Made by a program: the position numbers and the translations under genes. This document shows, in pieces, positions 5,621 through 49,100 of a DNA stretch of 64,000 nt (positions within the stretch are counted from its first letter, which is position 1; the number at the start of each line of letters is the position of its first letter). The notes under the pieces are model-generated. The model worked only from the letters and a program-made list of their open reading frames with translations. It did no database searches and was not told where the DNA came from. Origin of the DNA: Iphione sp. A-MEVVRFRX5 (lineage: Eukaryota); NCBI GenBank assembly GCA_976226885.1, contig OZ320320.1, forward strand, positions 67,828,001 to 67,892,000. The letters run 5' to 3'.

Positions 5621-5632
5621 AGCCTTGAACTT

Positions 5633-7415: not shown

Positions 7416-7420
<5 letters not shown>

Positions 7421-7502
<82 letters not shown>

Positions 7503-22300: not shown

Positions 22301-25300
22301 GTTGTTATCTTAGCAAAAAAAGAGAGGACCTATTAGAGGAGGGGGAGGAGTAGATACCTGCAGATTTTTGTGGCTCTTTCTAATGATAGATTTCTCCATT
22401 TGATTGTGTGATACATTTGCTGAATTCCACAACACTTACAGTACTGAAATCATGTATCAATTGCTTGCCTTTTTGTATCGGAGAGTCAATGTTATGCATG
22501 TACACGTTAAAATTTTCACATATCGACCGACTGGCATTTGGGCAGGCAGATAGGCAGGTGGTAAAAAGAGACTGTCAGATGAGAAAAGTGTCTGTTGTTA
22601 TATATATGGCAACGATATTTTAAAAAAAATCTATTTTGCTGTGTGTCCACCCTACACGCTTCCAGCCGGGCAGTGCCATCAGCAGCAGTGCTGGCACCAG
22701 CAGCCACTCTTCGCGCTCCTCCAACCGTGCTCGTACTCGCCAGTACCGCACGGTGGCGCACACGGCGCAGGTCGACGAGTCGCTCTTCGGTGAGCCCAAC
22801 CGCGACGCCCACCGCCAGCAGCTGCTTGAGAAGAAATGGCGCCAAGAGGCGGCCTCTCCACTCGAGGAGGAGGCACAGAGGCGGAGCGCTGGTCGTCAGA
22901 AGAAGGACAAGAAGTCAAAGGAAACTGTCCAAGTCATCACCAAGGATCTCATCCGCAATCTCATGTAAGCCCCAGAGTTCATGATAGTATAGAATCTGGT
23001 GTAGATGAGTTATTTTGTGCTGCATACAGTGTAAATTTTTCTAAAGGTCATTCCTCTCATTCCAGGTAGTGGTTACTATTTTCATCTTGAAATTGTCATC
23101 AGTTACAGCCAGAGCCAAACTCCCTTCACCCAAAAATAGGAATCAAGACTAACATTCCGTAGCTAAAAGAAAGAAGCGCTTTTTGTGTTTGAACTTATGG
23201 TATTTGTTTTATGAATTTGTTGTACAGTGTGCCCTCTGAAGACCCGTCTGGACAGTCACTGATACTTCCCAGCTATGAGTTCTACCGCATCCGTAACGCA
23301 GCCCGCATCCTCACTGACGAGGATAAGAAGCACATGGCAGAAATGCACAAGATGGCTAAGGAGGAACAAATGGTGAGTTTAAACAGGGTATCCAGACGAG
23401 AGACTTTGGCAGTAGGGAGCTGTGGAGTTTAGATAAGTAACTCATGGGGGGGGGGGGGGTCATGCAGTTTATATGCTCCGTTTGGCTAGATTTACCTACG
23501 TTTAATTTGCTGTACACGTAAATGTGTAAGGAAAGTATGTTGTAATTGACCCATTGCGAAGAGATTGAAGAAACTGGTAGTACAGACAGATTTTTCACTA
23601 ATTGTGACGTAATCATGGAGGACCAAAAAAGTGACCCCAAAATGGTTGACAATTTCTTGCATTTCAAAGTTTGAACACAAATTTCTCATTAATTCCTTGA
23701 TAGATTCTCATCTAACTTGGTAGACATATAGATATTGTACGCCCCGATCGAAGAGACATAACGAAGTAGTACGTTTCCGAAGTTTATTGCATGAAGTGCA
23801 AAACATGAATGACAATGGTCTCCGCCTTGAAGCGATATTTATAGTAAACTGTAAAACTCTGCCCGGAGTCTAGACACTCCGCCCCAAATCTCCGCTAACT
23901 CCGCTAACTCCGCTACTCCGCCCACACTGCTCCCTTCTGAAAAAGGCTCGGACCCCGAGCCCACATAACTGTATGCAAGCTGAATAAAGAACTTGTCAAC
24001 AACACTGTCTGAACTTATCTAAGTCAATACGTAGAGAACAAGAACTAGAAGGAGCATGTACTTGCTCCTAAATGCTTCCTGAGTTGGGAGGGCATGTGCT
24101 TGCCCTCCCCTTAGAGAGCTTCACTTGGAAGTCTTCCTCGATGGTAAGGTCCACGTGGTCAGGATCCGCTTGACAGAGTTCGAAGAAGGACCGGGTGCAG
24201 CGGGCGCGAACACCCGCCACCTCCCGGCCCAAGGTCTGCACCCAGGCCTCCAAGGTGGAAGCGTCCTGCGGAGGGCTCCGCAGGAGCAACCGAGCTGCTT
24301 GACGAACTGTCACATGGTAGGAGTCTGTTCCAGCTGACACCGTGGACTGTCCCTTTGCTGACACTAGCCGCCACCCCAAGGGTGCGGCCACCAGGGGCGT
24401 AACCAGCCGGCCATTAGCCCAAAGTCGTACTGCCTCCGGAATGTTAGTGTCCAACAGGACTAACTGCCGCTTGGCGCCGGTCCCAGGGGGAAGGCGCCCA
24501 GCCGTTCCAGGACCGGCCACTGGGGTAGAAGGTAGGGGTGCCTTCTGCTGGCCCGGTCCCGCAGGAGTCGAGGTGGCGAGGGGGGACACGACTGTCCCCC
24601 CACCCAAACCACCGGCGTGGTGATGTTCGCTGTCCTCCCTCCCGGCCTGAGAGAGAGGGGGCTGATCCGGACGTCCCGGGGGTGCCGGGGGGATCACAGG
24701 CTGCACCGGAGGGGTATCCGGCGCCACTCCTGTGGGAAGACGATCCGTACTGACCACCGGGCCAGTACCCGCGGGTCCTGCTGGGGTAGGGAGATGACCC
24801 GCGCCGTCGTCGCCGCCAGCGTCGGGCGGAGCGTCTATGGGCGGAGTGATGTTGGGGAGCTGCAGCGAACTCCGCCCCGATGTCTCCGCCTCCGCTGAGC
24901 CGCCCTCCGCCGAGCTCACCGGCCCCGCGGGCCCCGCCGTCGTCGTCTCAGGATGAGTAGGAGGTGGGGGTCCCGCCGGTGCCAACCCCGTGGATTCTTG
25001 GTCTCCGGCGGCCTCGACCGCTCCGCCCGGTTGCTCCTCCTCCTCCTCCGCCGGCGCAGGCTCCGCTGAGTCTCGTCCCTCTGCCAGCTCCGCCAGGGTC
25101 CGTACGGCCTCATCGATATCTCCCTGGGCGACCTCAGCACCACCGGACGAGTCTAGTACCGCGTATCGTACTTGTCCCACGGTCGGCTCTCCTTGTTCGG
25201 TCTTCTTCTCCGGCCCAGGTTGAGGGGGCGCCGCCTCTTCCTCTTCCTCGCTCGAGGTGAGGACCACCACTTCGCCACCCTCATCCTCCGGCCTCGTCCA

Positions 25301-28300
25301 GTCTAAGCCCAGCCGTGCGTCCAGGTCCCTGGCCTCCTGGCTGAGGGTCGAGTACGATGATCCGGGCGTAGCAGATGACGGGGTGCCCAGGATTCCTGCG
25401 GTGGTGGCGGCTCGAGCAAGGGGGGACATCGTAGCGGTGAGCCCCTTTCCTGTAGTAGCCTTCCTCTTAGCTGGGGTCGGCGTCGCTGCTTCGCCTGCAG
25501 ACGAGATGGGGGAGGTGACTGGCTGATACCCCCCCGGCCCGCTCTCATCTCGCGTAAGTCCAAATCGTGGCCGGGCGTCCTCACATGGGAGTGGGTATAC
25601 CAGTGTGGTAACCCCTCCCCTTTTCCTTTTTCTCGACCCCCGTGGTGAGGCCGGGCTCGCGCCGCCCCCGGGGTGCTGACATTGGAGGTGGGGGACGCCG
25701 TCTGCTCTTCCTGGGCCGCCCGTTTGCGCTGCCTAGCTTCACATGCGGCTGCCACTCGCTTCAACTCAGGGGTGAGCCCTGTACTGGCCGGGGAAGAGTC
25801 CAGCCCATGCAGCCGTACATCCACTGACCGGCCTCCAGCGGAGCCCAGTCCTGACGGTCCAGCACGAGGGGAGCCTGGGGTCCCCTGCACGGTCGAGGTC
25901 ACAGCTTCCCCCTTGCTCCCTCGCGGCCGCAACTGCCGGTCGGACGCCTCCGTCGCCTCCTCCTCTTCGCTCTCCCCTTCGTCATCGTCCTCCTCTTCCT
26001 CCTCTTCAGATTCCTCCACCGCGGCCGGAGTGGTGCCAGAAGAGCTACTCCGTTGCCGCTCTCGCTTGGGACGTGGAGGAACGGGGTCCCCCCTCATCAT
26101 GGCTCTCTCCTTGGCCCGCTCCCATTCCTCAACTCGCAAGAGCCAGCGTTGCTCTTCCAGCCTCCGTTGAGGAACCCTTGCGTCGCGCCCCGTCTTCAGA
26201 TCGACGAAGCACAAGTCTGCATCCTGCCCCCACTCCAGGTAGTGGTCCCCGTCGGTGGAGTGTTGGGCCTTGAGGTGCCGCCGGAGGTCGTCCCGGCGCT
26301 TGAAGATGGCCCCGCGACAGCGAGGAGCGGGGCAACGCCGGCAGAACGCGAGTCGTCGATGGGTCCCCATGTGCCGCCGCAAGTTGCCCGGTCGGTCTGT
26401 CTGGTAGCCACAAAGGTTACACCCGTGGCTGGTGTCCCCGGTCTCGGCCATTTCCACGTTGTCGGGGGCCCCTGGTTCTGGTACGCTCCGCCCTGGGTGT
26501 AGAGGCCCGCCTCGTAACAGCAAGTCTGGTCGTAGGAACGGCGGGGGGGTGGGCGGTCTCCGCTGGCACGCCTCCGCTGTTGTCGTGCTCCGCCCGGAGC
26601 TCGTCTGCACGTCCCTCGAGGGCGAACTCCGCCGGCCTGGCCTCGGTTCGCTCCGCCCGGAGAATGAAGGGCTGCCTCGTAAAGGCAAGTCCGGTCGCGG
26701 GAGAGGCGGTCTCTGTCGGTGCGTCTCCGCTGTCGTCGCGCTCCGCCCGGAGCTCAGCTGCACGTCCCTCACGGGTGAACTCCGCTGGGCCAGGGAAGGC
26801 GATCTCCGCTGCTCTTGCTCCGCCGCTGTCGCACTCCGCCCTGGAAATGACCTCTCCGTTGGGGGAGCGTCTCGGTGAATGGATTGAACAGCCCACTCCG
26901 CTGCCTCGCGCTTATAAGCACCCGCCAACAGCTCCGCTAGTCTCTGATTGGCTAGCGGTTCGCGCGCTCGCCGCTCATTGGTCGACGCTGGGCGGAGTGC
27001 CGTCAGCCCCCTTTGAGCCCGCCCTGCGGTCTCCGCCGAGCGGAGAGGTTGGCTAACTCCGCCCGGAGACAGCTGCTGGGCGGACTCCGCCCGGGACTTG
27101 TCGCCTCGCCCGTCTTGGCCCCAGGGCGGTCGCCGACCTTCCAGCTGCCACTCTCGGCAGTGCCCTTCCCAGAGCTGGGCGACCAGGGTCTTGGTGGCTT
27201 GACCTCCATAGCGCTGGCGCAGCTTCCGGCATATTCCTCGAAATTTCCACAGTGCCAAACCGAACCGGTCGCGGCGACGGGGGCGTCCAGTCTTCTTCGG
27301 GGGAACAGTCTTCCTCGCCGTACGCCGGGGGCCTAGCATTCCCCGCGTCTGTCGATGTAGCTCCCGCAGTTCCTGGTTCAGCATCTCCGCCCAACCCCGG
27401 GGAATGCGACCCTGGGTCGGAGTCGGCCGTTCACGGGCGGTGCTCTCATCCCCTTCGGGGCCGGTTACCCGTCGCCTGTACCACCGAGGGGGTGGCACAC
27501 GGGCTGAGTGAAGTTCCATAGCGTCCTGACGAAGGACGTTCACTCGGCCGATCACGTCGGAATCTTCCCTCGCTTCTGTGGCAAACGCAGGCTTCAAGAG
27601 ATCGGCGTGGACAATTCGTTGTTTGCTACCTCGCCCAATGCGGTATACCACCGTACTGAGTCTGGCTCTGACCTCCCACGGCCCCTGCCAGCGGCACTGA
27701 AGCTTGGGCGAGCGTCCCTTCTTCTTGATAGGCGAGTAGACCCAGACGTTGTCACCAGCTCGATATTCCTGATGCCGCACCTTCTGATCGTACCAGTCCT
27801 TACGCCGCTCGGCTGCTCGCTGAAGTTGTCGCCGTACCGTTGAATGCGCCGTCACTAATCGATGGCGGACAGATTCCACGTATCCGTGCACACTCACCTC
27901 TGGTTCCCCAGGCGAACCGACCATCAACTCGACTGGAAGGGTGGTTTCCCGACCCAGGGTCAACCAGTTGGGGGAGAACCCCGTCGTGCGATGAGGAGTA
28001 GCCCGGTATGCTGCCATCACAAAGGGTAGTTGTTCGTCCCAGTCCGACTGGTCCTCCTTGACAACCTTGGCCAGCATTCCTGTCAGTGTCCGGTTGAACC
28101 GCTCCACCACCCCATCGCTCTGAGGATGGTAAGGAGTGGTCCGGGTCTTTTGAATCCCCAGCAGTCGCAGGAGCTCCCGCATCAGCGCAGCGTCGAAATT
28201 TCTTCCCTGATCAGAATGGAGAATGCGAGGAGGTCCGAACCGGCATACTACCTCCCTGAGGAGATGGCGAGCGGTCGACTCTGCATCCACTTCTGCCGCG

Positions 28301-31300
28301 GGAATCGCCTCTGTCCATTTCGTGAAGTGGTCGGCGACCACAATGATGTAGCGGTTACCTCTAGGAGTAGTCGGAAACGGTCCACACACATCCACAGCCA
28401 CTAACTCCCAAGGTCCAGGAGCCAGCCGGAGTTGCATGGGCGCTCTTCGCTTGCGGGCAGGGTCCTGACGACGCTGGCAATCGAGGCACTCTTGATTCCA
28501 GCGACGAACATCACGCCCGAGTCCGGGCCAGAAGTAGCGTAGGCGAACTGCTCCTTCCGTCTTCTCGGGCCCGAGATGCCCCCCGAGAGCGCCTCCATGC
28601 ACCTCCTTCCAGACTGCCCACCGCAAGCTCTCCGGAACGTATGCCTGATGGCGCAGGCCCCCGTCCTCCATACTCCACTGCCGGCACAACAGTCCACGGG
28701 ACACACACAGTCGAGGCCACTCATTTTTCAGGCATCGCGTCTCATAGTCATCTTCCGGTACGCGTTCGGGTGCCTCTCCTTCTTCCTCCACACGACGGCG
28801 CAGGTCCCGCGTCAGGTCATCCTGTTCTTGAGCCTGCCTCAGCCCACCTTCGTCCGAACGAGCCTCAACTTGCAAGGCGGCCACTTGTCCGGTTAGGGTC
28901 TCGTCATCCTCTTCCGGCTCCCTGCCACACTGTCGGCACCTGGTCCTCGAAAGACTATCCGCATTACCGTGACGGCGGCCGGGTCTGTGCTCAATTTCCA
29001 CGTCGTAACAGTACACTTCCTCTAACCACCGGGCTAGCTGACCCTCGGGTTCCCGGAACCGGCATAACCACCGCAAAGAGCTGTGGTCCGTACGGATCAC
29101 CACCTTCCGGCCCCCGACGTAAGCGCGGAACTTGCGTAGGCCGAATACCACTGCCAGCAACTCCTTACGTGTGACGCAATAATTCCTCTCGGCCTTCGAA
29201 AGACTCCGGCTCGCGTACGCTAGCACCCTCTCCTTGCCGTCTTGTTCCTGCGATAACACAGCCCCAATTCCAGCGATGGAGGCATCCGTGTCTACCGTCA
29301 TGAGTCCTTCGGCTCTGGGATACGCCAAGATAGGGGAAGACATCAGCCGATTCTTGAGTTCGTCGAACGCTGCTTGGCACGCGTCGCTCCAGCGGTATTC
29401 TTCCCCCTTCTCAAGGAGCTGGTGAAGAGGTGCAGCCACGCTGGCGAATCCTTCAATAAAGCTCCTATAGTACGAGCAGAGGCCGATGAAACTCCTGAGC
29501 TCCGTGACACAACGGGGGGGCGTCCAGTTCTGGATGACTCTCACCTTCTCAGGGTCCGGCTTCACTCCTTGGGCTGACACCCGATGGCCAAGATAAGCCA
29601 CCTCTCTCTGGAAGAGCTGGCACTTCTGCGGCTTAATCTTGAGCCCCGCTTGGCGCAGCCGACCGAAGACCTCCTCGAGACGCTCTACCATTTCCGGAAC
29701 CGTCCGGCCGATGACAATCACATCGTCAAGGTACACCAGGCAACTTCGTCCCACTAGGCCCCGGAGTACCGCCTCCATCAGGCGCTCGAAGGTGGAGGGA
29801 GCGTTGCACAGTCCGAAGGGCATCACCCGGAACTGGAACAGCCCCCCAGGCGTACACACGGCTGTCTTCTCCCTGTCTTCCGGACGGACCTCCACCTGCC
29901 AATAACCGCTAGCCAAGTCGATTGCCGAAAAGAACTGCGCCCCCGAGAGTGCATCCAACGTGTCATCTATTCGGGGCAGTGGGTATGCGTCCTTCTTGGT
30001 CACTTGGTTGAGCGCCCTGTAGTCGATGCAGAACCTCCAGGAATTGTCCTTTTTCTTGACTAGGACGACCGGAGATGCCCAAGGGCTCACGGAGGGTTCC
30101 AGTACCCCTTGCCGCACCATCCGTTCCACCTCTTGCCGGACCACTTCTCGCTTCCCTGGAGGTAGCCGCCGAACTCGCTGCCGGATGGGCCGGTGACCTT
30201 CCACCTCTATCCGATGTTGCACCTCGCTTGTGCACCCCAGTGGTTCCCCATCCTCCTGCAGGCAAGCTTGGTTTCTTGTCAGCATCCTATGGATAGCCTC
30301 CCGATCCTCCGAATCAAGTTCCTCTGGTAGTCCCGACATTAGGGTGGCCACCGCCGAACTTCTCTTCTCACTTCCTCCCTCTGCTGTGACGCTGAGGGCC
30401 GCACCGAGCTGTTCCGGGTGGTCGACCAGTTGGGCTCTCCCGACTACCGTCCCTCTCCTGAGGTACCGCCCGTCCGGGCCAGCATTGGCAACTTCCACCC
30501 GCCCGGACTGACTCCCTGCCTGGCATAATGACCCTGCCAGTCGCAGCCTGGACCGTGCCTCCCACTCGGGGGAGGGTTCCACCAGCACGGCATCCCCGGA
30601 GCCTCCAAGCTCCTCCCACGCCACGGAGACCTCCCGTGTGGTGTAGCCGTCCAGCTGGCAATCCTCTGCCAATGCCACCTTGCACCCCCAACTGTCATCT
30701 TCCTCCGGCACGCTCACTCTCAATGTGGCCTCACTAGTGTCCACCTGGGCCTTCCAGCGACGCAAGGTGTCCAGGCCAAGAATGGCAGGACAATCAATGC
30801 TGGCCACCCAGGCATCAATTTCCAACTCCTCCTCCGCAAACTTGGCCGTGATGTTGGTCTTGCCTTTCACCCTCAATGGGCTCCCGTCTGCACAGAGGAT
30901 CCTTCCTTTAGTCGGGGCGAGCTCCGAGGCGCCCACGGCCCCCGCCGTTTCTTCGGAGAGGAGCGTCAGGGACGCCCCCGTATCCACCAACCACGGCACC
31001 TTGTATCCTCCCACCTCGCTGACCAGGATAATGTTGGCGGCAGGCGTCCTTTCCCCCTGTAGCAGCACTTCTCGCGTCCCTTCCAACTGCAGAACTCTCA
31101 AATGCCCCGCCAGCCCGTCACGCGTATGCTTCTCAGGTTGGGCCGCCCGCTCTACTGCTGAGGGGCGGCCGGTTCCCCGTTTCCCGAGGCCGTAGAGGGG
31201 GGAAGTTTGGGGCACTCTCGTTTGAAGTGTCCTGGCTCCCCGCAATTGAAGCACTTCTTCGGGCCGGTCTTCTTGTTGCTTCGCTCCTCTCCTTCCCGGT

Positions 31301-34300
31301 TACCCACCAACTGCATCAGTAACTTTTCGAGCCGTTCCAATGCCGCTGAGTTGGTTTCCACCTTTCCACTGGGCCCCGATCCAGCAGCAGGCAGGGGGGC
31401 CGCCTCTACCTTGTGAACCTTCTTCGGAGCCGCCCGCTCCTGCTTGTTCTGATAATACGACTCGGCGACCTGAGATGCAGAGAGGGCCTCCCTGAAGGTT
31501 GTCACCCGCGCCTGGGTGACCCATTTACGGACCTTTTCGTTTGCGAGGGCCCCAACGTAATATTCCCGGCACATCCTGTCTTTCCAAGGCCCTTTTGCTT
31601 CCGGATAGGCCAATTGCACCAACCTCTCCACCTCGTCCGCCAGGTCTGCCAGGGCCTCCTCCTTCCCTTGCCGACGCCCCTTGAGCTGCTGGATATAAGC
31701 GTCGGTTTGGTGCTTGGACTGAAACCTCTCCGACAGCGCCTCCACCAACCTGGCATAAGCCCCGTCCTCCGCAACGTCAATTCCAGACCCCCGCAGCACG
31801 GCTCTCGCTGACTTTCGCAACACGATTCCCAGTTGTAGGGCCTTCTCCGCTTCCGTCCACTGATTGGCCTTGGCGACCAGCTCGAAATGTTGCAAAAAGT
31901 CTCGCAGTGGTGTGCTGCCATCATAGGTGTCCGGCTTCACCTGAGACTTCCGGGGCTGCGGGTCCGGGCGCAGCGCCGCCCGCAGCTCCTGTACGAACCC
32001 ATGCCAGAGGGGTGGCTCTGACGACACCGCGGCCTCTTCCTCTTCACCAGTCTGCTCACCGTCATCCTCGCCGGGTTCGCGGTCATTCACTTCTTCTCCT
32101 TCGTGTCCCGAGGCGCGTGGGGCTATGGAGGGGACAGGTAACTGATGTCCCTCTCCGGCCCCACCAGAACGTGGGGGATCTCCGCCAACCGATTCTCTCT
32201 TGGCCGACTCATCCGCTTCGCTTCCCCATAGCTCGTCAGCTGCGTCGTCCGGTAGCTCCGCCCGGAGCTTGCCGAACTCCGCCCACTCGGCGGACTCACC
32301 CTGCTCCGCCGAGTGCTCCGCTCGCCGCTCCGCCGAGTCGGCCTCCGCCGCTGCTCCGGTGGCGGAGATCCCACCGCTGCCACCAATTGTACGCCCCGAT
32401 CGAAGAGACATAACGAAGTAGTACGTTTCCGAAGTTTATTGCATGAAGTGCAAAACATGAATGACAATGGTCTCCGCCTTGAAGCGATATTTATAGTAAA
32501 CTGTAAAACTCTGCCCGGAGTCTAGACACTCCGCCCCAAATCTCCGCTAACTCCGCTAACTCCGCTACTCCGCCCACAATATACATGTTATCTTGGATCT
32601 GTAATATCTCTGTGGGCAGGAAAAGTAGAAATGTAAAATGTTGACGAGGTTGATAGTCTGGCTAGTCATGACCTCGTCGTCACCAGTTAGAGCATGCAAA
32701 TATACTCTTTGACGTCATGCTCATCTGGTGTTTTGTAAAATCAACTCGGCGATAGGTCAATTATTTTAGAATTCCTGACAACGACATATAGAGACAAACT
32801 CTGGGCAAAAAACAAATTTGTTACACAGTGTGTGAGTGAATCTTTCACCTGCTGTTGATCCGTTCTATAATCTTAGGGACCCAGCAATAAGACTTATAAT
32901 AGGCAAGACAAAGATGGGCATTATTTGCTATTGATGAGAAAGGTTATACCATTCAATCACTTCTGATGAGGAGGATTACCATTTGCTCACAATTTAGATG
33001 ACAGGTTATTTTTCTCTTTCGAGCAGTGTTATTTTTTTATAACATTTGTATCATTATCCTGTAACACATCAACCTTCACTTGTGCTTTCTACGTCGGCCT
33101 CTATTACTACATGGCTGTTTCTCTGTTTGGGTTGTCCCCAGAGTGCTGTCGCAGATCGCAAGCAGTACATGAAGCAGCATGATGTCGACCGGGTACAGAA
33201 TGAGAAGCTGTCTGAACTGGAGGAGGAGGAACGTGAGAAGAGGGAATACCTCAAGGAGAAGGCTAACGCTCAGCGTCAGGAGCAGGAGGATGAAATCAAG
33301 AAACTCAATGAGGTGAGTTCTGCCGGTCACCGGACCCTTCACTTGAGGGATGAGTGAAGCATCCAGACGACCTTTTCACCCTAAAGTCACTTAATCGCAG
33401 TTAGTTTGAAGCTGTTGTTATTTGTGATAAAACAGACCCGATATTTTTGGACCATGCAGTCCGTGTATAATGGACCAAGGAGGGGAGCCACTCTGGAAAC
33501 ACTGATGTCCGACCATCCTTCGGGATCTTAATTGTAGGTCTATCTGTTTGTAAACCATTTAGTCAAATGCACTGACTTTTAATATGATATCACCATATGT
33601 GGACTCTTGCTGCTTTAATTGGTGCTGTTTGAGGTGAACTAAGGGTAGCTTTTCTTGACTTAAAAAGTATCTGTCCTACCACTAGGAAGCGAAGAAAGTC
33701 ATACCTGAGTGCCCAGCTCTTAGAAGTTCATGGTAGAGTAGTAAGCAGCGGTCGTAGTGGCCAGCTGGTTGTTCGGAGGTTCAAGTTCTTATATTTTGTT
33801 CCCCAGCTAATCCTTAATGCCAAGTGCCACGCCATCCGTGATGCTCAAATCCTAGAGAAGCGCCAGATCAAGTCAGAGCTGGTGGAGGAGGAGCAGCGGT
33901 TGGACGCCATGATGGAGGCAGACAGGCTCAACAGCATCCAGGTAGAGGAGAGCATTAACCAGCGCCGCAAGCAGGACCGCATGGTAGGAGCCATGAAGGT
34001 CATGGAACAGATCCAGGAGAATGAGCAGGTACATACATTCTATCATATAGTCTATCATATGCTGTATCTGTCATACATTCTACCAATACATTGTCACATA
34101 TTCTTACATACATTTCCATGCATTCTTTTTATGATTCTATCTTGCATACATTCTATCGTACATTACGTCATGCATTCTGTCATACATCTGTCTCCATCAT
34201 GACATTCAGTCGATCCATGTCCCAACATACATTGCATGATCATCAGTCCAAAAGAAATGAACCATCTTAAGGACTTTGTTGTTTTGAGGTGTCAGTCTGT

Positions 34301-40148: not shown

Positions 40149-43100
40149 TCACAGTTCGGTGAAGAAGCGCATGACAGCCCGCACGATGCCGATGTCATTG
40201 TAGTTGAGGTAGCAGAGTCCTCCAAATGCAGCCATTGACATAAGCAGCAACACAGGCTTTACTAATGGCCGAAGGTATTCGCCATGTACATAGTCGGTGG
40301 TCACTCCCTGGAAAGCCCTACAGAGAGAAAGACACCAGTGTTAACAAAGTTGAATAAAGTTGAAATAGCAGCATCCTCGAAATGCAGCCATTAACATGGA
40401 TAACAGCATCGGCTTTTTGAATGGTTGAAGGTTTTCACTGGTGTACACAAGGGATACTCCCATAAAAGCCCTACAGAAAGAATGACATCAATGTTCTTAA
40501 GGTGCAGGTGCGGAGACTTCCAAATGCAGCTATAAATATAAGTAGCAACATGATGTTTACTAATGATCAAAAGTATTCACTATGTACAGTGGTCACTTGA
40601 TTAAAAGCCCTTCAGAGAGAAAGATGATCATCATATTCAGGTTGTGCAGTCTGTTGAATATAAGCACTAAAATGAACTTTCACAGAGCTGAGCTTGGAAA
40701 ACAACAGACTCATCTCCCTATTTTTACTTCTACTTAAGTGTGCTTTCTTATCATGCAAGCCTTGTAAATATCCTTATTAGATGAGAACACTTTGTCATTT
40801 TCTTATTATGAGAGCTGCTTGTCAGCCACGCTGATGTTGCACGACGACATGAAGTCCCAAATTTCAAATGATTATGCTTTCTGGTAATCAGGAGCCTGAG
40901 ACTTTCAAGATCAACATGCTTAAACATTACTTAATCAGGACATGAAAGATGACAGCAGCTGACACTGCATAGCTGAGGGCAGCTGATGGAAAAGAGGAGC
41001 ACTGCTAGGAAGATGGGGATGAGATCAATGGTTAACCAGCATTTTTAAACATAACTCACCAGTGGACATGAAGTACGACGGCAGCTGACACTGTATAGTC
41101 TAGGGCAGTTGATGGAAAGAGGAATGCTGCTGGGATGACGGGGATGAGAGCGAAGGCTAATACCCGCTCTCCCTTCCAGTGACTGATGGCAGGTGGGTGG
41201 TCGCCTTCTGAAGGGTCAAGGACAATGAGTAATTAAGGAAACATAACCTGTCTGGTAGTGCAATCAATATTCTGAAAACTGCCGAGTCTGCATTCTTTTT
41301 AATTTATCCAAATACATTTGAACGGAATAGAAAGCATCTGTGGTCCAGAATGAAAGTAATGCGCATTTCATTATCAAACGGGTGAACATGTTTCTCCACT
41401 GATGATAAAAATATATACTAACACATTATAAAAGCGTTACTGTTCTTTCAGTCTACAGCTTCCCTTCCCTTACCTGCTGGTCCATATATGCGTGCATCTC
41501 GTCTCGGCGTCACTGCTAGCGTCTTGGAGGGGCCAACAGATGCTGCTAGTGGCGCCATCCGGCGGAGCAGCTGGGGACCTGCCACTCGGGACAGGTGACT
41601 GGCTGCAATATTTTAACCGACTATGAAGCATGTGTGTTTTTTGAATATATTTATACATGATCTATAATGCCAAATACACAATATAAACAGTCCAACAGTC
41701 TGTCAGACCACGATATGCACGGCTGCCCCTGTTGCTCTAGCTATATCTAATTGTCGTGCTAATTCCTGGTAAATTATTGCAACTCAGCAAAGGGAAGGCA
41801 TAGCCAACTATACAAACAGCTATTGTTCAGCCTCGCTCTCGATAATGTTAGTGCTGAGTTCAAAGTTAACGCTCACCCAGTAACCACAAGTCAACTTTTT
41901 TCTGTGTGGGTTAACTTTTATTCCCTCAGAACTAATAAATCAGACCAAGGTGATCAAGTGATGTTCAGAGGTCTGACTGTCCTTAGAGTAGCTGTTGACT
42001 ATTTCTCCATTCAGGGTCGACAACATATGCCGGTCAAAGTTATGAATTCCTGAGCCAAATGATCCAGATGGATAAAATTTGAAAAAAGTTATGGTTGAAC
42101 CCTGGTCTAGTCTAGTCAAACAGCCATTCTGTTTGCTGCAATCAAATCAGCGATAGCATGCTCTGTGAAGGTCGTCCAGGCCTGGGAGAAGGGTTACTAT
42201 TATGTATGACTACAATGAATTCGATCTGGTAGATGTAGGGTAGGGAACCCAGTTGTTTCAGGCCGGGCCAGTTGATTTGGGCCCACTGTACACCACTCTC
42301 TCTGTGAATGATGTAGATGACATGACATCCGGGGGGGGGGGGGGGAGTTAGCTCAGTGGTAGAGCACTGGTCCACTGACTGAGAGGTCACAGGTTCAATC
42401 CTGGGCCTAGGACTCTTGATCAAGACCAGACAGATTTACTGTAGCCCTAACCCAGAGTGGTCCACAACTCGTAAAAAAAAGCTGTGGGTATATAGGATTC
42501 TGTCCTCCATGTACAAAAAGATCTCAGAAACCTATTTGAAATAAGAGTAGGGAGGAACTTGGGGTATTCTGGTCTCTCAATTCTCAATAAAAGATGGTAG
42601 TATGCTACCCCAGGAGGATATGGAAGAGCCCTGTCATATGATAGGTGAATATCTAGTTCCTGGTAAAAGATACAATGAAATGAAATCAAATGAAATACCC
42701 TCTTTGGAGCTAAGTTATCTATTCTGTGGCATTTGTGACCTAATTTCAAATCAAAACACAGAAAATTCACGCTAAAATGGCATGCTTCTGTTAATGTTTC
42801 CCATTAGGAAGTTGCGTGGAGTAACATATTGTTACGACCCGATCTAAGCATTGCGAATAAACCAATGTCCACACAGAAGTAAAATAGACGTGTTATTTAT
42901 TCAAGAGCAAACCGTGAACTGAACGGTGTCCCCGCACGCACTCCTATTTATACACCAGCCATAACGTGCGGGGTAACTAACTGCGGAGACATTTACTCCT
43001 CAAAGATCGCGGAGACAAGTTTACTCAGCATAAATTGCGGGGAAGTACATCCCCGCACAACACTGCTCCTCCTCGTAAAAGACTCGGCCCCCGAGTCACT

Positions 43101-46100
43101 TTTAAGAATACCGAGAAATACATCCCAGTAACAACATTATCACAGTAAAACAGAGAAGTACATCTCTGGAGCAATCGAATTTCCAACTCTGAATATAGGG
43201 AAGTACATCCCAACCATAAAAAAAGGGTAGCTTATTAATCTGAAGAATCTGGGAAGTACATCCCTGTGTCAAAATGCAAGAGTGGTGGGACTTAAGGTCC
43301 AAGTCTCTGTGTAACTCACTGAACTGGAAGAACGTCCTTGTAGTCTAGCACCAATATAACTTATTTACATAGGGTGCCCATAGGGCACAGTCCGTAATCC
43401 TGGGACATCCGTTTCGACTCAGTTATCGTCTGTTCGCCATTTCCACAGTCCAACACAGCCGGTCTCACTCTTAATCCTCCAACCCGCCCCTTATGGGGGC
43501 GGTTGGGCCCTGGTCCCCGACAAAGGTCTCGTCCGCGGACAGGGAGGCCACCCCGTCTTCACTGTTCGTCACCATAACATCATTATAGGAGAGCCTCATG
43601 TGGGCTCCACCTCTGGCTCGCCTCGCTTGCCACCAGGTCCACACACTGGTCTGGGCCACATCCGGTTGGGGACTCAGTTCAGCAGAGTGGTCAAAATGGA
43701 CCTGGGGCCTTGCTGAATGTAGGCGAAACCGGATCCTCGTCTCGGCTGTCCTGATGCGCCAACCAGCTGGCGGCGCTTCCCCAAGGGTGAGGGCCCGACC
43801 GTAGGCCCACTCGATCAGCTCTTGTTCTTCCTCAGCAGACAGCACTGGCCACGGTGTTGGGGCCGTCGCTGCCCGAGGGGGACCGGCCCCACGTGGGCCA
43901 GCCCCTCCCTCACCTGGGCCCGGGGGAGCAGCACGTGGGCGAACCTCGTGAAGAACCTCTTCTTGCTCGCGGCGTGGTCCGGCCCCCGGCCCCGGAAGGT
44001 CATCGCGCGGGTGACGCTCGTGAAGGACGTCCATCTGGTCGCGCCGTGGTCCCGCCCCTGGTGTCGCTGTGTCCCGCTCGGGGGACTGGCGGCCGGCCGG
44101 ATCACCCTCCCCCCCCTCCTCCTCCGACCCATGGGCGCCGGTCGAAGGGGATAGGGTGGGCGGTCGAGGGCCAGGGGGGACCTCCTCGTCGTCGCCGCCC
44201 TCTTCTTCTGGTCTGACACCCGGCACGTCGTCAGCTCCGGCTTCCGTCTCTCCGAGGCCCAATAGTGTGGCCACGGCCTCGTCCACGGCTGCTCCCGTCG
44301 GTTGGTCGCCATTCCGGTCACCTCCGGTCGTCTGCCACGTCGCCCTTACCGGTGGCCTCCTCGGGGCCGATGGCCAACGTCCCCGCCCCCCCGGCCGGGG
44401 TAGTGGGCAGCGAGGGTGGTAAGTCTCTCTCCGAGAGGGTCACGGCGAAGACCCTCCCGGATGGTGTAGAGGTGGTAGGCTCCTCTCGTCGCTCGGACTG
44501 GCCCAACCCAGCCTGTCGGATGACCTCGGCCGCCTCCTCACTCCAGTCCGTGACAACTGACGAGGGGGAGGGCAGTGCTGAAGAGGGCTGGCTCCCGGCA
44601 CGGGGTGATGCTCGGTGCCGGAACCCGAGTCCCAGCCCCCTTCCCTTGGGTGCGCCGCAGTCAGTAGGAAGGAGCCATCCTCTCCCCGGGGTCGGGGGCG
44701 AGCTCCCCGGCAGGGACACTCGGGGGGAGGTGGCGGCAGGCAGTCCTCCGGCCCCTCCTGGGGCAACCTCTTGCTGGCGGTGGCGAGCCTCACTGAGCCG
44801 GGCGGCCGCGATCAGTTGCGGCGTGAGGCTGGGTGTGGATGCCCGGCTACTCGAGTCTAGGCCCCAGAGCTGAACGTGCGTCCCTGGTCCCGGCGACAGC
44901 CCCGGGCTCCCTGCACTCGTCCGTCCCTCGGGTAGGCTGACCGCTGGGCTGCCGGTACTGGATACAACAGGCTTCTGTGGCACCGTACTCCCTGCCTGTC
45001 CGGGGTCGGGGGTAGTCTGGCTGTCATCCCGCTCTGGCGAAGGGGTGGCCGGTCGCCCCCGTGCGGCGGATGCTCATCACGGCAGACGTTTCCGGGGAGG
45101 AGGGTTGGCTGAATCGCTCTCCAAGTCGCGAGGTGATGACGTCATCTTCCGCCGCCCCGTCGTCCGTTGCAACCCCGAGGTCGAAGGCTGAGGAGACGCC
45201 GCCCTGCCGCTGGAGCCCGACGTCACCACCTGTAGCTGGCCATCATCGGACGAGGTCAGCTCCTCTTCCACGTCGTCGCCTTCTTCCTCCGAGTCTTCCT
45301 CTTCCACCATCGACGCCGACGTAGTGCCCTTGGCTCGCTTCTTACTTGGCACGTCCTCCCCGCGAATCATGGCCAGCTCTTTTCTTCTTTCGAACGCCTC
45401 AAGTTCCTTCTCCTGTTCGAATTCCGCCTGCCGGAGGGGAGGGACTGGCACCACGGTGCCCGTCAACGGGCCTGCCTCTGTCGAAAACCTCATGAACTCC
45501 ACCTCGACATCCTGCCCAATCTGGAGGTAATGGGGCTGGAAGTCTTGGTGGACCCCTCGAAGGTGGCGCCGGAAGTCGTCCCGGCGCTTGAAGATCTTCC
45601 CCTTGCACCGCGGCACGGGGCAGCGCCGTACGAAACCCTCCGCCTCATGCACACGGTAATGGCGGATCAGGTTGGCTTTCCGCCTAAACACCTTCTGGCA
45701 TCGGCTGCAACGCGGCGACGGCTTCCTCGCAGGCATCTCTCTCCGAAGACGGCGACACGCGGGGCAGGTAGTATCTTCTCCGCGCGGGGACGGTACCGTG
45801 CGGGGTTGGACCACCCCGCCCGGGGTAACTTTCTCCGCGCGAGGACTGGGTACCCCGCCTGGGGCTCTGCTATGGTTATCCCCGCCCGGGGATGCGGCGA
45901 CGTTCCTGTCAAGGGTACTCCGCACCGGGGTCGCGCAGACCACTCCGCTCGGGGCGTTGGTCGACTCACTGAAGCTATCCCCGCCCGGGGATACACACAC
46001 GTTGATAATGCTTCGGCCTGAAACAATTCGTCCAGTCTTTGCTTCCTGTTGTAGGGGTACAGCTTGTTCGTCACCTCGATGGCGTCTCAACACAAGTGGC

Positions 46101-49100
46101 GGTCCCCGCGCGCACCTTTCCTTATATACGCCGCCACTACTCCGCAGTCGATTCTGATTGGTTGATTCAGATCTCGCGGTCAACGAGACAATGTTTCTCC
46201 GCGCGTAGTGCGGGTATCTGGTCTTTGCCGCCTTCTCTTGGTGCGGGGTCGTGGACTTTGCCCCTCCTTCGTGCGGAGACTTTGTCTTCGTCGATATGCG
46301 CAGTCGCTCTCCCCGCTCGTGGTGCAGGGGCGTGGACTTTGCCGCTGGGGCTCGACGCGGGGTCACGGACTTTGTCGTCCTCTCCTGCGGAGACCTTGTC
46401 TTGGTCGATGTCCGTGGCCCCCCCCCCGCTCTTGGTGCGGGTACCTAGACCCGAGAGATCGGCGGTAGCGCTCTTCGTTCAACTGGTTGAACTCTCGGAA
46501 AATTGCAGTGGTGGTAGACTTCCCGATCCTCTCTTCCATCTTGCGGCGTACTCCCTTTATCTTCCACATTAAGCGGCCCAAACGATATTTAGCGCCTTTA
46601 TCATTGAGGGACATGACTCCAGCCAAGTATGCCTTGCTCAGTAGGGGGGCTACTAGTTTAGCCCAGGCTCCTTCTTTGTTATTCCTTGGTTTCCACCTCT
46701 TATCCTTCTTTTGGGCGAGACAATCCTTCTTCTCTCCCGGAGGCCTGTACCACCGTGGGGGGGGGCAGTGTCCGGGCCGGAGCGTCAGGGCTTGCTCCGG
46801 TCCCTCAAAGGTCGATCTAGGAGGGGGGGGCCAGAGGTCCTTCTGTCCTCTCTGCTCCCCCGCGAAACCTGTCGTGGTCCCTCCTCCTGACCAACCCCCA
46901 CTACCAGTCCCCCCTCGTGGTGCCTCCAGCTCTTCCATCTCTTCTCGCCACACCGCGTGGACCACCCCTATGACGTTATCACTCGGGGCGGTTATTGCTG
47001 GCTTCAGTAGGTCAGCATGAACGACTCGCCGCTTCCTTCCGTGCGCGATGCGATAAATGACCTGAGACAACCGACTTTCGATCACCCACGGGCCGTGCCA
47101 ATGACGCTGTAACTTTGGGGAACGTCCAATCTTCTTCGTGGGGTCTAGTAGCCAAACGGAAGCTCCTTCCTGATATACGTGCTCCCGCACACGTCGATCG
47201 TACCAATCCTTTTGTCGCTCGGCACACCTCTTGAGCTTCTCCCGGGCGAGGCTGTGAGCTTGGATTAACTCCTCCTGCTGTCGATTGACGAATTCCCCTC
47301 GGGGTTCCGAGTCTTCTGGCGGCTGTCCAAACATCAACTCTGCTGGCAAGGTCGTCTCACACCCCAATAACAAGCTATTGGGAGTCAGACCCGTCCCACT
47401 GTGAGGGGTGGCCCGATAAGCAGCCAGCGCGAAGGGGATCTTCTCGTCCCAATCCCCCTGTCCTTCTTCCACCAGAGCAGCCAACATGCGGTTCAACGTA
47501 CGGTTAAATCTTTCCACCACTCCATCGCTCTGGGGATGGTACGGAGTGGTCCGGGATTTCTCTACGCCTAGCATCTTCAACAACTCGCGGAAGAGCGCCG
47601 ACTCGAAGTTCCTGCCTTGATCGGAGTGGACTATCCGGGGAGGGCCATATCTGCACACTATCTCCTTGAGTAACACGCGGGCTGTGGTCTCTGCCGTAAA
47701 ATCCGGCACTGGAAAAGCTTCCACCCATTTAGTAAAGTGGTCAGCCACCACGAGGACATAGCGGTTCCCTTGCCTGGTCTCTGGAAAGGGGCCGCTTACG
47801 TCTACTGCTACGAACTCCCATGGTCCAGCGATGGGTCGGGCCATGAGCGGACTCCTCTTCTTCACCCCCGGATCTTTGGTCTGTTGGCAAGTCAAACACT
47901 GCTGTCCCCAGCGCTCCACATCACGTCCTAGGCCTGGCCAGAAATACCTGATGCGCAGAGCACCTTCAGTCTTCTTCACTCCCAAGTGTCCTCCCAGAGC
48001 TCCGGAGTGCACCTGCTCCCAAACTTCTTGCCGTAACTCTGTAGGGACATAGGCTTGAGGGGTCTTGCTGCCATCCTCTCTGTCAAACTGCCGGACAAGG
48101 ATGCCATCCTTCAGTGTCAAACGAGGGGTCTCCCCATAGAGGCACCTCTCTTCCCGATTGCCCGGACTGATGGAACCATCCTGCTCCGGTGCGCGGCCCT
48201 GTTCCAGTGCTTCGATGATTTTTCCTGTTAGTACCTCCCGCCGTTGAGCTGCTCGGAGTACTCCTTCACCTACTGGCACCACCCTAACGGCACACACCTC
48301 TTCGGTTGCTTCGTCTTCTTCTTCCTCATGCCGACCACACTGAAGACAGACCTTCCTTGACAAGCCGTCTGCGTTCCCATGTAGCCGCCCCGGGCGATGC
48401 ACAATTTCTAAGTTGTAGGTGTAGACCTCTTCTAGCCATCGGGCTAACTGTCCTTCCGGTTCCTTAAAGTTGCAGAGCCAACGAAGAGAGTTATGATCGG
48501 TACGAATGCACACGTTCTGGTCCCCCAGGTATGGCCGAAATTTCCGCAGTCCGAACACCACCGCCAGCAATTCCTTGCGGGTGACGCAGTAATTCCTCTC
48601 AGCCTTCGTCAACGTCCGGCTTGCATAGGCTAGGACCCGTTCTTGTCCATCTTGGTCCTGGGAGAGAACAGCTCCGATCCCTCCTGCTGATGCGTCTGTA
48701 TCGAGGTGGAGTTGCCCCTCAGGCCGCGGATACCCCAGCACCGGTGCGCTAGTCATTCGCTTCTTGAGCTCTTGGAAGGCCTCATCGCATTGGTCGTCCC
48801 ACCGGAACTCTGCATCCTTCATCAACAGCTTGTTCAAGGGCGCGGTGATGGTAGCGAAAGCCCGTACGAAACTTCGGTAGTACGAACAGAGGCCAATAAA
48901 ACTTCGTAGCTCCGTCAGGCAACGAGGGCGTGGCCAAGTCTGTATGGCCCGGATCTTTTCAGGGTCCGGCCCTACACCATCAGCTGAGACCCGATGTCCC
49001 AGATACGCCACTTCCTCCTGGAAGAGTTGACACTTGCTTGGCTTCACTCTCAGTCCCGCCTGTAACAGCCTGCTGAACACCTCTTCTAAGCGGTCGACCA

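What the first reader, a model, noticed from the sequence alone, without database searches (positions are those of the whole stretch)
23736..32578. A Gypsy retrotransposon encoding a zinc-finger protein predicted to bind a motif arrayed in its own LTR (GCGGAG)
Seen: after integrase, element 2 encodes two C2H2 fingers (26421-26260). Helix residues -1..+6 are RPGNLRR (finger 1) and RRDDLRR (finger 2). Established: in the Zif268 / modular-assembly code, R-1 N3 R6 (RSDNLVR) reads GAG and R-1 D2 D3 R6 (RSDDLVR) reads GCG. Fingers bind antiparallel, so the pair predicts 5'-GCG GAG-3'. Seen: exactly this hexamer occurs 5 times in U3 upstream of the LTR TATA box (spacing 13, 9, 9, 8 bp) and once near the start site. 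It also occurs 8 times in about 190 bp after the PBS and about 19 times in about 620 bp around the internal promoter, but I saw only scattered copies in RT/RH/IN. Inference: the element carries its own sequence-specific transcription or chromatin factor plus cognate sites, a self-contained regulatory circuit. Functional analogies are foamy virus Tas and the VANDAL VANC anti-silencing proteins. I do not know of this being described for Ty3/Gypsy elements but could not search.
Basis: partly seen in the sequence, partly recalled or inferred. Interest (0 to 1): 0.97.

Follow-up and report, generated by a model that had tools for sequence, protein, structure and literature searches.

The report
Gypsy retrotransposon with its own zinc-finger factor
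A young Gypsy-type jumping gene carries an extra two-zinc-finger gene whose predicted six-base DNA target is the most frequent six-base word of the element, clustered at its own promoters. This suggests, but does not prove, that the element brings its own regulator.

Summary
The element (window 23736-32578, minus strand) is an intact Ty3/Gypsy LTR retrotransposon with identical 191-nt LTRs. A C2H2 finger pair lies at 26421-26260. GCGGAG is the element's most frequent hexamer: 49 sense and 7 antisense copies, against about 8 expected.

The copies cluster in U3, after the PBS, in the spacer before the fingers, and in ORF3. None lies in RT/RH/IN between element positions 1743 and 5188. Synonymous-codon shuffles never reach the observed counts, and the motif sits in several reading frames.

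New evidence:
- Two more elements in the window have the same layout, each with its own hexamer in both the LTR and the internal arrays.
- A conserved Met opens the finger protein after a long ATG-free stretch.
- A CCAAT-TATA module flanked by motif copies sits upstream and mirrors the LTR promoter.
- Homologous finger ORFs occur in distant relatives. In one of them a finger-2 change from Asp to Ser goes with a GTGGAG array.

Binding and the direction of regulation remain untested. The code fails for three non-canonical or damaged fingers. No literature precedent was found. Verdict: a real feature and probably a self-encoded DNA-binding regulator. It is a new variant of a known kind.

The parts
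32388..32578 (-). 5' LTR (191 nt, TG..CA) of element 2. U3 carries five GCGGAG copies, then TATAAATA at 32495-32488, a sixth GCGGAG at 32477-32472 and AATAAA at 32440-32435.
32529..32573 (-). U3 array of five GCGGAG copies (spacings 8, 9, 9, 13) upstream of the TATA box.
   Evidence: TRF period 9; 0.09 expected in the LTR
32368..32385 (-). Primer-binding site TGGTGGCAGCGGTGGGAT, 2 nt after the LTR. It lies inside the gag ORF and is shared by elements 1 and 3 and by L004.
   Evidence: Assignment to the tRNA-Leu 3' end is from memory only.
31152..32411 (-). gag ORF (419 aa, Ty3 capsid-like, CCHC knuckle). Its ATG lies in U5.
32180..32367 (-). Post-PBS array of 7 sense and 1 antisense GCGGAG in the disordered N-terminus of Gag. 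8 of 10 Ala-Glu dipeptides in gag are spelled GCGGAG.
25303..31254 (-). Long pol ORF (1983 aa). PR-RT-RH-IN spans about aa 80-1222. The frame then stays open through the spacer and into the finger domain.
   Evidence: 0 stops in the pol frame against 10 and 5 in the other two frames
26486..27090 (-). Spacer array of 19 sense and 2 antisense GCGGAG around the internal promoter-like module. It includes a 153-nt duplication.
26909..26985 (-). Internal promoter-like module: CCAAT (26981), CCAATCAG (26951), GCGGAG, TATAAG (26916), then GCGGAG 7 nt after the box. Element 3 has the same order and spacing at 46161/46128.
26050..26451 (-). Conserved finger domain starting at a Met (ATG 26451-26449, A at -3 and G at +4). 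Two C2H2 fingers lie at 26421-26260, followed by a beta/helix module and a long helix.
25930..26022 (-). Acidic Glu/Asp-rich stretch downstream of the finger domain. It follows a basic PKRERQR patch and is present in all three window elements.
24068..25429 (-). ORF3 (453 aa, no Pfam family). It is open in one frame only and overlaps the end of the pol/ZF frame. The C-terminal 100 aa are weakly similar to the element 3 counterpart.
24870..25093 (-).
23927..23938 (-). Polypurine tract AGAAGGGAGCAG abutting the 3' LTR.
23736..23926 (-). 3' LTR, identical to the 5' LTR. ATAT target-site duplication at 23732-23735 and 32579-32582.
42830..52154 (-). Element 3, a sister family with 235-nt LTRs 98% identical and an ATAT duplication. 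The finger ORF is 46366-45077, with Met at 45736 and helices RKANLIR and RRDDFRR. GCGGRG arrays occur in both orientations in U3, after the PBS, and in the spacer.
1..7177 (-). Element 1, an older decayed sister cut by the window start. Its 5' LTR is about 6961-7177. The finger ORF is 1515-343 with Met at 1056. Its own hexamer GCGGGG is the top word of the element (19 copies) in both the LTR and internal arrays.

Best explanation
Element 2 is a recently inserted, apparently intact Ty3/Gypsy retrotransposon of a clade that carries an accessory gene 3' of integrase. The gene product begins at a conserved Met-Ala. It has two C2H2 fingers, then a small beta/helix module, a long helix, a basic patch and an acidic stretch. 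I propose that this protein binds double-stranded GCGGAG, with finger 2 on GCG and finger 1 on GAG. The sites are arrayed in the element's own U3 on both sides of the TATA box, just downstream of the PBS, and around a second internal CCAAT-TATA promoter that would drive the finger gene itself. The predicted outcome is a self-contained positive circuit. Basal internal-promoter activity makes the factor, which then occupies both promoters and the CpG-rich leader. There it either activates transcription through its acidic region or keeps the DNA free of host silencing. What the sequence shows: the motif arrays, their nucleotide-level excess, their concerted change between sister elements, the conserved gene start, the shared promoter module, and the code match. 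What is inferred: binding itself, separate expression from the internal promoter, and the sign of the effect.
For: (1) GCGGAG is the top hexamer of the element: 49 observed against about 8 expected, with none in RT/RH/IN between element positions 1743 and 5188. The excess survives synonymous-codon shuffling (0 of 500) and the motif occupies several reading frames. (2) The hexamer read from the two helices by the standard code equals that word. I estimate the prior chance of this at about 1 in 1000. (3) Sister elements show the same three array positions with private words. Element 1 uses GCGGGG in the LTR and 17 times internally, against 5 GCGGAG. Element 2 has 37 against 9 the other way. Element 3 is mixed. 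The changed base falls in the finger-1 subsite, and finger 1 is the finger that differs; the finger-2 contacts and GCG stay constant. (4) The distant relative L004 (48% pol identity, from a different sample) has finger 2 REDSLRR and finger 1 HRKNLTR. Its LTR array unit contains GTGGAG, present 42 times in the element. So the change from Asp to Ser at position 3 goes with C to T in the middle base. (5) L002 and L003 keep R-1, D3 and R/K6 in finger 2, and their private LTR arrays contain GCG. L001 lacks finger 2 and its array lacks GCG. (6) The longest or second-longest ATG-free interval of each window element (527, 803 and 479 nt) ends exactly at the Met before finger 1. That Met aligns with the start of free-standing finger ORFs in L001-L003. 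(7) The internal CCAATCAG-GCGGAG-TATA-GCGGRG order and spacing is conserved between elements 2 and 3, although the spacer DNA is otherwise unalignable. It mirrors the motif-TATA-motif layout of both LTR promoters. (8) Element 3 has the motif in both orientations in U3 (2 sense, 4 antisense), as expected for duplex recognition. (9) AF2 models two beta-beta-alpha fingers at mean pLDDT 81.5. The pair aligns over both fingers and the long linker with DNA-bound CTCF ZF6-7, with a whole-chain E-value of 1e-9 summed over five weak stretches. (10) Both dated insertions are in ATAT, so the fingers do not steer integration to GC motifs.
Against: There is no binding data. Finger 2 has one extra residue between the second Cys and the Phe, and Pfam does not call it. 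The code does not predict the 3' half of the arrays in L002, L003 or element 1, where finger 1 is non-canonical or has lost a Cys. Element 3 has the same helices as element 2 but a mixed GCGGAG/GCGGGG repertoire. In L004 the most constant part of the repeat is CCCGGTG rather than GTGGAG. In element 2 the sense bias is strong (49 to 7), which an RNA-level role would also explain. L001-L003 have arrays only in their LTRs. The spacer is open in the pol frame in element 2, so the fingers may also or instead be made as a Pol tail. About half of the sites extend to GGGCGGAG, a host Sp1-type GC box. Six base pairs give low genomic specificity.
Confidence: 0.55

Rival explanations
1. The arrays are binding sites for a host factor, for example an Sp/KLF-type GC-box protein or another host C2H2 protein. 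This would resemble Su(Hw) on Drosophila gypsy. The element's finger protein would then do something unrelated.
For: The 8-mer GGGCGGAG matches the classical GC box (from my own knowledge of Sp1 sites). 29 of 49 sites have G at position -1, and the word GGGCGG occurs 25 times in the element. U3 tandem repeats serving as host enhancers are common. L001-L003 have private arrays in their LTRs only.
Against: 17 of 49 sites read AGCGGAG, including three of the six in the LTR, which breaks the GGCGG core. Sister families use different words while sitting in the same genome window. This reading does not explain why the word equals the code reading of the element's own fingers, nor the second match in L004.
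Confidence: 0.2
2. The motif acts in the RNA, in packaging, export or translation of the genomic RNA. It would be read by the finger domain as part of Pol, or by the Gag CCHC knuckle.
For: Sense bias is strong in element 2 (49 to 7) and element 1 (19 to 4 for GCGGGG). One cluster lies right after the PBS, where packaging signals usually sit. U3 is also present at the 3' end of the genomic RNA. The finger domain is in frame with Pol in element 2 and in L062.
Against: Element 3 carries many antisense copies, including 4 of the 6 in U3. A motif copy sits between the TATA box and the start region in four promoters, a position that matters for DNA and not for RNA. The helix-to-base match follows the duplex-DNA code.
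Confidence: 0.1
3. The finger domain is a C-terminal module of integrase. It would tether the pre-integration complex to chromatin, or bind the U3 end of the cDNA as transposases bind subterminal repeats.
For: The ORF runs continuously from integrase to the fingers in element 2 and in L062. The first motif copy starts 6 nt from the LTR tip. The chromodomain of chromoviruses is a precedent for a targeting module at this position.
Against: Both dated insertions are in ATAT, and L004 lies in a (TA)n tract, so targets are not GC motifs. In L001-L004 the finger ORF is separated from pol by stop codons and kilobases. The conserved Met, the ATG-free leader and the internal arrays have no role in this model. 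The U5 end has no motif.
Confidence: 0.1
4. There is no function. The motif excess is a by-product of tandem duplication and of GC-rich, purine-rich, low-complexity coding sequence.
For: A 153-nt duplication and 9- to 17-nt periodicities exist in the arrays. The arrays lie in Ala/Glu/Arg/Gly-rich disordered protein regions.
Against: None of 500 synonymous shuffles reaches the observed counts. The flanks of the core are variable and the spacing is irregular. Equally GC-rich stretches such as positions 6128-7149 have no copies. The same places are occupied in three elements whose spacers do not align.
Confidence: 0.04

Closest known systems
Foamy virus Tas with its LTR and internal promoter
   Same: A regulator gene lies 3' of pol. 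A second, internal promoter would drive that gene. Cognate sites sit at both the internal promoter and the LTR, giving a positive-feedback layout. This comparison rests on my knowledge of spumaviruses.
   Different: Tas is not a zinc-finger protein and there is no sequence relation. Here the host is not known, the element has no env, and the internal promoter and activation are inferred only.
Su(Hw) binding-site array of Drosophila gypsy
   Same: A Ty3/Gypsy element carries a dense array of short C2H2-protein sites immediately downstream of the PBS in the transcribed leader. This comparison rests on my knowledge.
   Different: Su(Hw) is a 12-finger host protein. Here the predicted reader is encoded by the element itself, and the sites are also in U3 and at an internal promoter.
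TnpA of En/Spm and VANC of VANDAL DNA transposons
   Same: A transposon-encoded protein recognises short motifs arrayed in the element's own promoter and CpG-rich downstream region, and counteracts silencing. Motifs and proteins differ between sister families. This comparison rests on my knowledge.
   Different: Those are plant class II transposons with unrelated proteins. Nothing equivalent was found for LTR retrotransposons in four literature searches.
Two-finger C2H2 DNA binders (Tramtrack, ADR1) and CTCF ZF6-7
   Same: A tandem pair of beta-beta-alpha fingers. The best sequence match in the PDB is CTCF, including ZF6-7 with the same long inter-finger linker. Tramtrack 2drp and ADR1 2adr are among the Foldseek matches.
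   Different: Foldseek E-values are all above 0.06. Finger 2 has an extra residue in its hairpin. The pair is packed against an additional beta/helix module that is specific to this family.

Membership tests
Ty3/Gypsy (Metaviridae) LTR retrotransposon | Direct LTRs ending TG..CA, flanked by a short target-site duplication | tested here: met
   The 191-nt LTRs are 100% identical and run TGTGG...GTACA. The 4-bp ATAT duplication is present.
Ty3/Gypsy (Metaviridae) LTR retrotransposon | Domain order PR-RT-RNase H-IN in pol, with gag carrying a capsid and a CCHC knuckle | tested here: met
   Pfam hits in this order: gag-asp_proteas, RVT_1 (1.7e-36), RT_RNaseH_2, Integrase_H2C2, rve, Integrase_p58_C. 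gag hits zf-CCHC and Ty3_capsid.
Ty3/Gypsy (Metaviridae) LTR retrotransposon | PBS next to the 5' LTR and a polypurine tract next to the 3' LTR | tested here: met
   The PBS TGGTGGCAGCGGTGGGAT begins 2 nt after the LTR. AGAAGGGAGCAG abuts the 3' LTR.
Classical C2H2 zinc finger (DNA-binding type) | C-X2-4-C-X12-H-X3-5-H spacing with conserved hydrophobic residues | tested here: inconclusive
   Finger 1 is canonical, but its Pfam zf-H2C2_5 score of 24.7 bits is below the 27-bit cut-off. Finger 2 reads C-X4-C-X13-H-X4-H, one residue too long, and Pfam does not call it. phmmer aligns both fingers to CTCF; the whole-chain E-value of 1e-9 sums five weak stretches.
Classical C2H2 zinc finger (DNA-binding type) | Beta-beta-alpha fold for each finger | tested here: met
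   The AF2 model has mean pLDDT 81.5, with strand pairs followed by helices at 21-33 and 53-67. This is a prediction, not a solved structure.
Classical C2H2 zinc finger (DNA-binding type) | Sequence-specific binding to duplex DNA | not testable with these tools
   Only the recognition-code reading and its agreement with array words in element 2, element 3 and L004 are available.
Chromovirus (Gypsy with an integrase chromodomain) | Chromodomain at the C-terminus of integrase | tested here: not met
   There is no chromodomain hit in the 1983-aa ORF at E up to 0.1.
Retroviral transactivator systems (Tas-like) | Sequence homology of the regulator to Tas/Bel1 | tested here: not met
   There is no Pfam family other than C2H2 in the 3' region. 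Database searches found no relatives outside this Gypsy clade.
Retroviral transactivator systems (Tas-like) | An internal promoter that drives the regulator and carries its sites | tested here: inconclusive
   The conserved CCAAT-TATA module has flanking motif copies and an ATG-free leader ending at the conserved Met. No transcript data are available.
Host Sp1/KLF GC box | GGGCGG core in every functional site | tested here: not met
   17 of 49 sites have A at position -1 (AGCGGAG), including three of the six LTR sites.

The most novel reading that the evidence does not exclude
A whole clade of Ty3/Gypsy retrotransposons carries a private, fast-evolving two-finger DNA-binding factor. Its recognition helices would co-evolve with short site arrays in the family's own LTR and internal promoter. 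Each family would then run an orthogonal, self-activating or self-protecting circuit, a Tas-like 'complex retrotransposon' built from a programmable C2H2 module.
Probability: 0.35. Interest if true: 0.9.

Novelty: new variant of a known kind. Interest (0 to 1): 0.78.

Why it matters
LTR retrotransposons are generally thought to depend on host transcription factors. Element-encoded site-specific regulators are known for complex retroviruses and a few plant DNA transposons, but I found none described for Ty3/Gypsy elements.

If the finger protein reads its own arrays, this would be a natural self-contained promoter and factor pair of about 400 bp plus about 130 aa. It would also be a case of zinc-finger and target co-evolution on the transposon side, mirroring the host KRAB-ZFP arms race. 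It would offer a way for sister families to regulate themselves independently in one genome.

The idea is directly testable, because the predicted site, the protein domain and the two promoters are all defined here.

Tried and rejected
- **Profile search of 1.84 billion representatives with the finger-domain alignment.** The list was swamped by polydactyl host C2H2 proteins. The few hits with longer coverage were ordinary fish-type ZNFs. The search was not informative.
- **Word-indexed protein searches.** I used the finger region inside pol and then the 382-aa finger protein. Neither gave a hit.
- **The search for related loci with the finger alignment.** Searches of metagenome, viral and prokaryote-genome collections returned no confirmed relative.
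- **Exact PBS-plus-flank pattern scan.** It returned more than 120 loci. They are LTR elements sharing the primer site, and only L062 has the homologous finger pair.
- **Foldseek of the AF2 model against the PDB.** Only tandem C2H2 domains matched, all at E above 0.06 and with large rmsd. I use this as weak support only.
- **Code-to-array match for L002, L003 and element 1.** It fails for finger 1, and I do not claim it.
- **Homology between element 2 ORF3 and the C-terminal domain of the L002 finger ORF.** tblastn found nothing significant, so I dropped the idea of one ancestral 600-aa protein.
- **DNA alignment of the element 2 and element 3 spacers.** Identity is only at the level of unrelated sequence.
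- **tRNA scan of the window.** None found.
- **Host organism.** I could not identify it. The nearest pol proteins are 51-57% identical and come from unnamed eukaryotic contigs in ENA assemblies.

Full report
**1. What is at the coordinates**

The finding lies in a GC-rich block (60-67% GC) set in DNA of about 41% GC. A 193-nt direct repeat, 100% identical, bounds it at 23734-23926 and 32386-32578. Two of those bases belong to an ATAT target-site duplication. The LTRs are therefore 191 nt, running TGTGG...GTACA, at 23736-23926 and 32388-32578.

The element reads on the minus strand in this order:
- 5' LTR, with TATAAATA at LTR position 84 and AATAAA at 139.
- PBS TGGTGGCAGCGGTGGGAT, 2 nt after the LTR.
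- gag, 32411-31152, with a Ty3 capsid-like region and a CCHC knuckle.
- A 1983-aa ORF, 31254-25303, with protease, RT, RNase H, integrase zinc-binding domain, integrase core and integrase C-terminal domains in Gypsy order.
- ORF3, 25429-24068, 453 aa, with no Pfam family.
- A polypurine tract abutting the 3' LTR.

The identical LTRs and a CpG observed/expected ratio of 0.87, against 0.45-0.59 in the flanks, indicate a very recent insertion into a CpG-depleted host genome. I did not take any contig for human. The N run at 38096-38288 was left untouched.

**2.

On the sense strand, GCGGAG occurs 49 times, against 7 antisense. It is the most frequent of all hexamers in the element. The next words are overlaps of it, and the next unrelated word has 23 copies. 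A first-order Markov expectation is 7.9.

| Region (element positions) | Sense copies | Note |
|---|---|---|
| Each LTR | 6 | 0.09 expected |
| After the PBS (212-399) | 7 | plus 1 antisense |
| Spacer before the fingers (5489-6093) | 19 | |
| 1743-5188 (RT, RNase H, integrase) | 0 | about 60% GC |
| 6128-7149 | 0 | 66% GC |

Permuting synonymous codons within each ORF never reached the observed counts, at 0 of 500 for gag, pol and ORF3. The motif occupies different codon phases. In gag, 8 of 10 Ala-Glu dipeptides are spelled GCGGAG, although GCG makes up only 36% of Ala codons. The signal is therefore at nucleotide level. It is written into protein regions that are low-complexity and poorly conserved.

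The bases flanking the core are variable. The exception is position -1, where C is absent, G occurs 29 times and A 17 times. One caveat applies: a 153-nt duplication in the spacer makes about five copies non-independent.

**3. Two more elements in the same window show the same system with their own words**

Element 3 (42830-52154, minus strand, LTRs 98% identical) and the older, truncated element 1 (1-7177) are diverged relatives. Both carry the same finger domain after integrase. The three-way alignment has 57% mean column identity. The conserved signature is CPxPRCxGxxFKRxxDxxRHL, followed by HYLxxGQDxDVEF and a helical segment.

Both have motif arrays in the same three places: U3, just after the PBS, and the spacer before the fingers. 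The words differ between elements:
- In element 1, GCGGGG is the top hexamer of the whole element (19 copies). It is used both in the LTR and internally, 17 times against 5 GCGGAG.
- In element 2 the ratio is reversed, 37 GCGGAG against 9 GCGGGG.
- Element 3 uses both words, in both orientations.

The LTR word and the internal word change together. This argues that one reader sees both.

The base that differs (A or G at position 5) lies in the subsite assigned to finger 1. Finger 1 is the finger that differs, with NHYCLRR in element 1. The finger-2 contact residues (Arg at -1, Asp at 3, Arg at 6) and GCG are constant. Element 1's finger 1 has lost its second Cys and the copy carries stop codons, so this point is only suggestive.

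**4. The finger domain is the start of a separate accessory gene with its own promoter-like module**

In each window element a Met lies 4-10 residues before finger 1. The longest or second-longest ATG-free interval of the whole element ends exactly at that Met. The intervals are 527 nt in element 2, 803 nt in element 3 and 479 nt in element 1. The Met is in a good initiation context.

Upstream, elements 2 and 3 share the same module: CCAATCAG, about 12 nt, GCGGAG, 11-14 nt, a TATA box, 7-11 nt, then GCGGRG. The surrounding spacer DNA is otherwise not alignable. Both LTR promoters have the same layout of motif copies upstream of TATAAATA and one copy 9-10 nt after it.

In element 2 the spacer is also open in the pol frame, with 0 stops against 10 and 5 in the other frames. 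So the domain could additionally be made as a Pol tail. In element 3 the reading frame changes near 46366-46440.

**5. Relatives elsewhere**

Searches with the finger domain alone found nothing. The pol core found its nearest relatives at only 51-57% identity, in unnamed eukaryotic contigs of ENA assemblies. I fetched these contigs.

Each of them holds a full element with an ORF downstream of pol. The ORF starts Met-Ala and runs straight into a homologous finger pair (L002, L003) or a single finger (L001). Stop codons separate it from pol. L062 has the pair at the end of a 1744-aa pol ORF. The accessory gene is therefore old and clade-wide.

Each element also has a private tandem word in U3:

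| Locus | Private U3/LTR word |
|---|---|
| L001 | GCACCGGGC |
| L002 | GCGCGCGTAC |
| L003 | TTTCACGC |
| L004 | AGACCCGGTGGAGCAAC |

In L001-L003 these words are confined to the LTRs.

**6. Does the finger code track the words?**

The module table reproduced in PMC5260015 confirms that RSDNLVR reads GAG, RSDDLVR reads GCG and RSDELVR reads GTG. The results for each element are:
- **Element 2:** predicted GCG-GAG, observed GCGGAG. This is a match.
- **Element 3:** same contact residues, observed GCGGAG and GCGGGG. This is a partial match.
- **L004:** finger 2 is REDSLRR and finger 1 is HRKNLTR. Ser at position 3 goes with T in the GTA and GTT modules, as far as I recall. The prediction is G(T)G-GA(G), and GTGGAG occurs 42 times in the element within the array unit. 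This is a second, independent match in which Asp to Ser goes with C to T. The most invariant part of that unit, however, is CCCGGTG.
- **L002 and L003:** finger 2 keeps Arg, Asp and Arg/Lys, and both arrays contain GCG. Their non-canonical finger 1 does not predict the neighbouring triplet.
- **L001:** it lacks finger 2 and its array lacks GCG.

Taken together this is more than chance would give, but it falls well short of proof.

**7. Structure**

AF2 on the six-sequence alignment gave mean pLDDT 81.5 and pTM 0.63. The model shows two beta-beta-alpha fingers, an extra strand/helix module and a 26-residue helix.

Foldseek returned only tandem C2H2-DNA complexes, including BCL11A, CTCF, Tramtrack and ADR1. 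All E-values were above 0.06.

By sequence, the pair aligns over both fingers with CTCF ZF6-7, which has the same unusually long linker. The whole-chain E-value is 1e-9, but it sums five weak stretches, and the ZF6-7 stretch alone scores 14 bits. The extra residue in finger 2's hairpin remains unexplained.

**8. Mechanism and rivals**

My preferred reading has confidence 0.55. The accessory protein binds duplex GCGGAG arrays at both promoters and in the CpG-rich leader. It acts positively on expression, either as an activator through its basic patch and acidic stretch, or by shielding CpG-rich DNA in a methylating host.

The rivals are:
- **A host GC-box factor (0.2).** About half the sites read GGGCGGAG, but a third read AGCGGAG.
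- **An RNA-level signal (0.1).** It is favoured by the sense bias in elements 1 and 2. It is disfavoured by the antisense copies in element 3 and by the TATA-proximal positions.
- **An integrase-tethering or cDNA-end-binding module (0.1).** It is disfavoured by ATAT target sites and by the free-standing ORFs in relatives.
- **A neutral by-product (0.04).**

**9. Comparison with what is known**

The system would work like foamy-virus Tas with its internal promoter, and like TnpA of En/Spm or VANC of VANDAL. The cis layout recalls the Su(Hw) site array after the PBS of Drosophila gypsy. It is a member of none of these families, because the protein is an unrelated C2H2 pair. The element itself meets every defining feature of Ty3/Gypsy and lacks a chromodomain.

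Four full-text searches found no description of a Gypsy element encoding a C2H2 factor matched to its own LTR. Repbase, Dfam and GyDB could not be searched.

**10. Verdict**

I rate it a new variant of a known kind, with interest 0.78.

Noticed in passing
window 32411-32368 (also 51940-51900 and about 6975-6930): The gag ATG lies inside U5 and the ORF reads through the PBS. The primer site therefore encodes a conserved peptide, M(S)LRSGRxIGGSGGI, in all three window elements.
   Followed up: partly
window 23732-23735 / 32579-32582 and 42826-42829 / 52155-52158; L004 6400-6488: Elements 2 and 3 are both flanked by ATAT duplications, and L004 sits in a long (TA)n tract. This suggests a target preference for alternating AT.
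   Followed up: partly
window 1881-2528: Three tandem copies of a 216-nt unit (93-96% identical) lie inside the post-integrase spacer of element 1. Each copy carries GCGGGG sites.
   Followed up: partly
window 25303-25429: The pol/ZF frame and ORF3 overlap by 126 nt in different frames, in a copy with identical LTRs. I could not tell whether the two parts are joined by frameshifting or splicing, or are separate products.
   Followed up: partly
L001 18951-19850; L003 15604-16400; L004 about 15990-16490: In distant relatives the finger ORF continues into long short-period coding repeats (PAAEPAP, SGHVSG, APPAQP). The DNA of these repeats partly resembles the LTR word or its reverse complement, for example CTCCAC 14 times in L004. 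This may be coincidence.
   Followed up: partly
window 7200-7500: Just upstream of element 1 there are four to five copies of a 65-nt tandem unit, followed by a long (GA)n microsatellite.
   Followed up: no
window 35065-36264 (+): Two open stretches encode Glu/Arg/Gln-rich coiled-coil-like peptides. They look like exons of a host gene. I did not identify it.
   Followed up: no
window 38096-38288: A run of 193 N, either an assembly gap or masked sequence. It was left as it is.
   Followed up: no
L002 20283-22301: Downstream of the L002 element, called genes carry a weak RVT_1 hit and a faint phage-integrase hit. This pairing of a reverse transcriptase with a tyrosine recombinase could be a DIRS-like element.
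   Followed up: no
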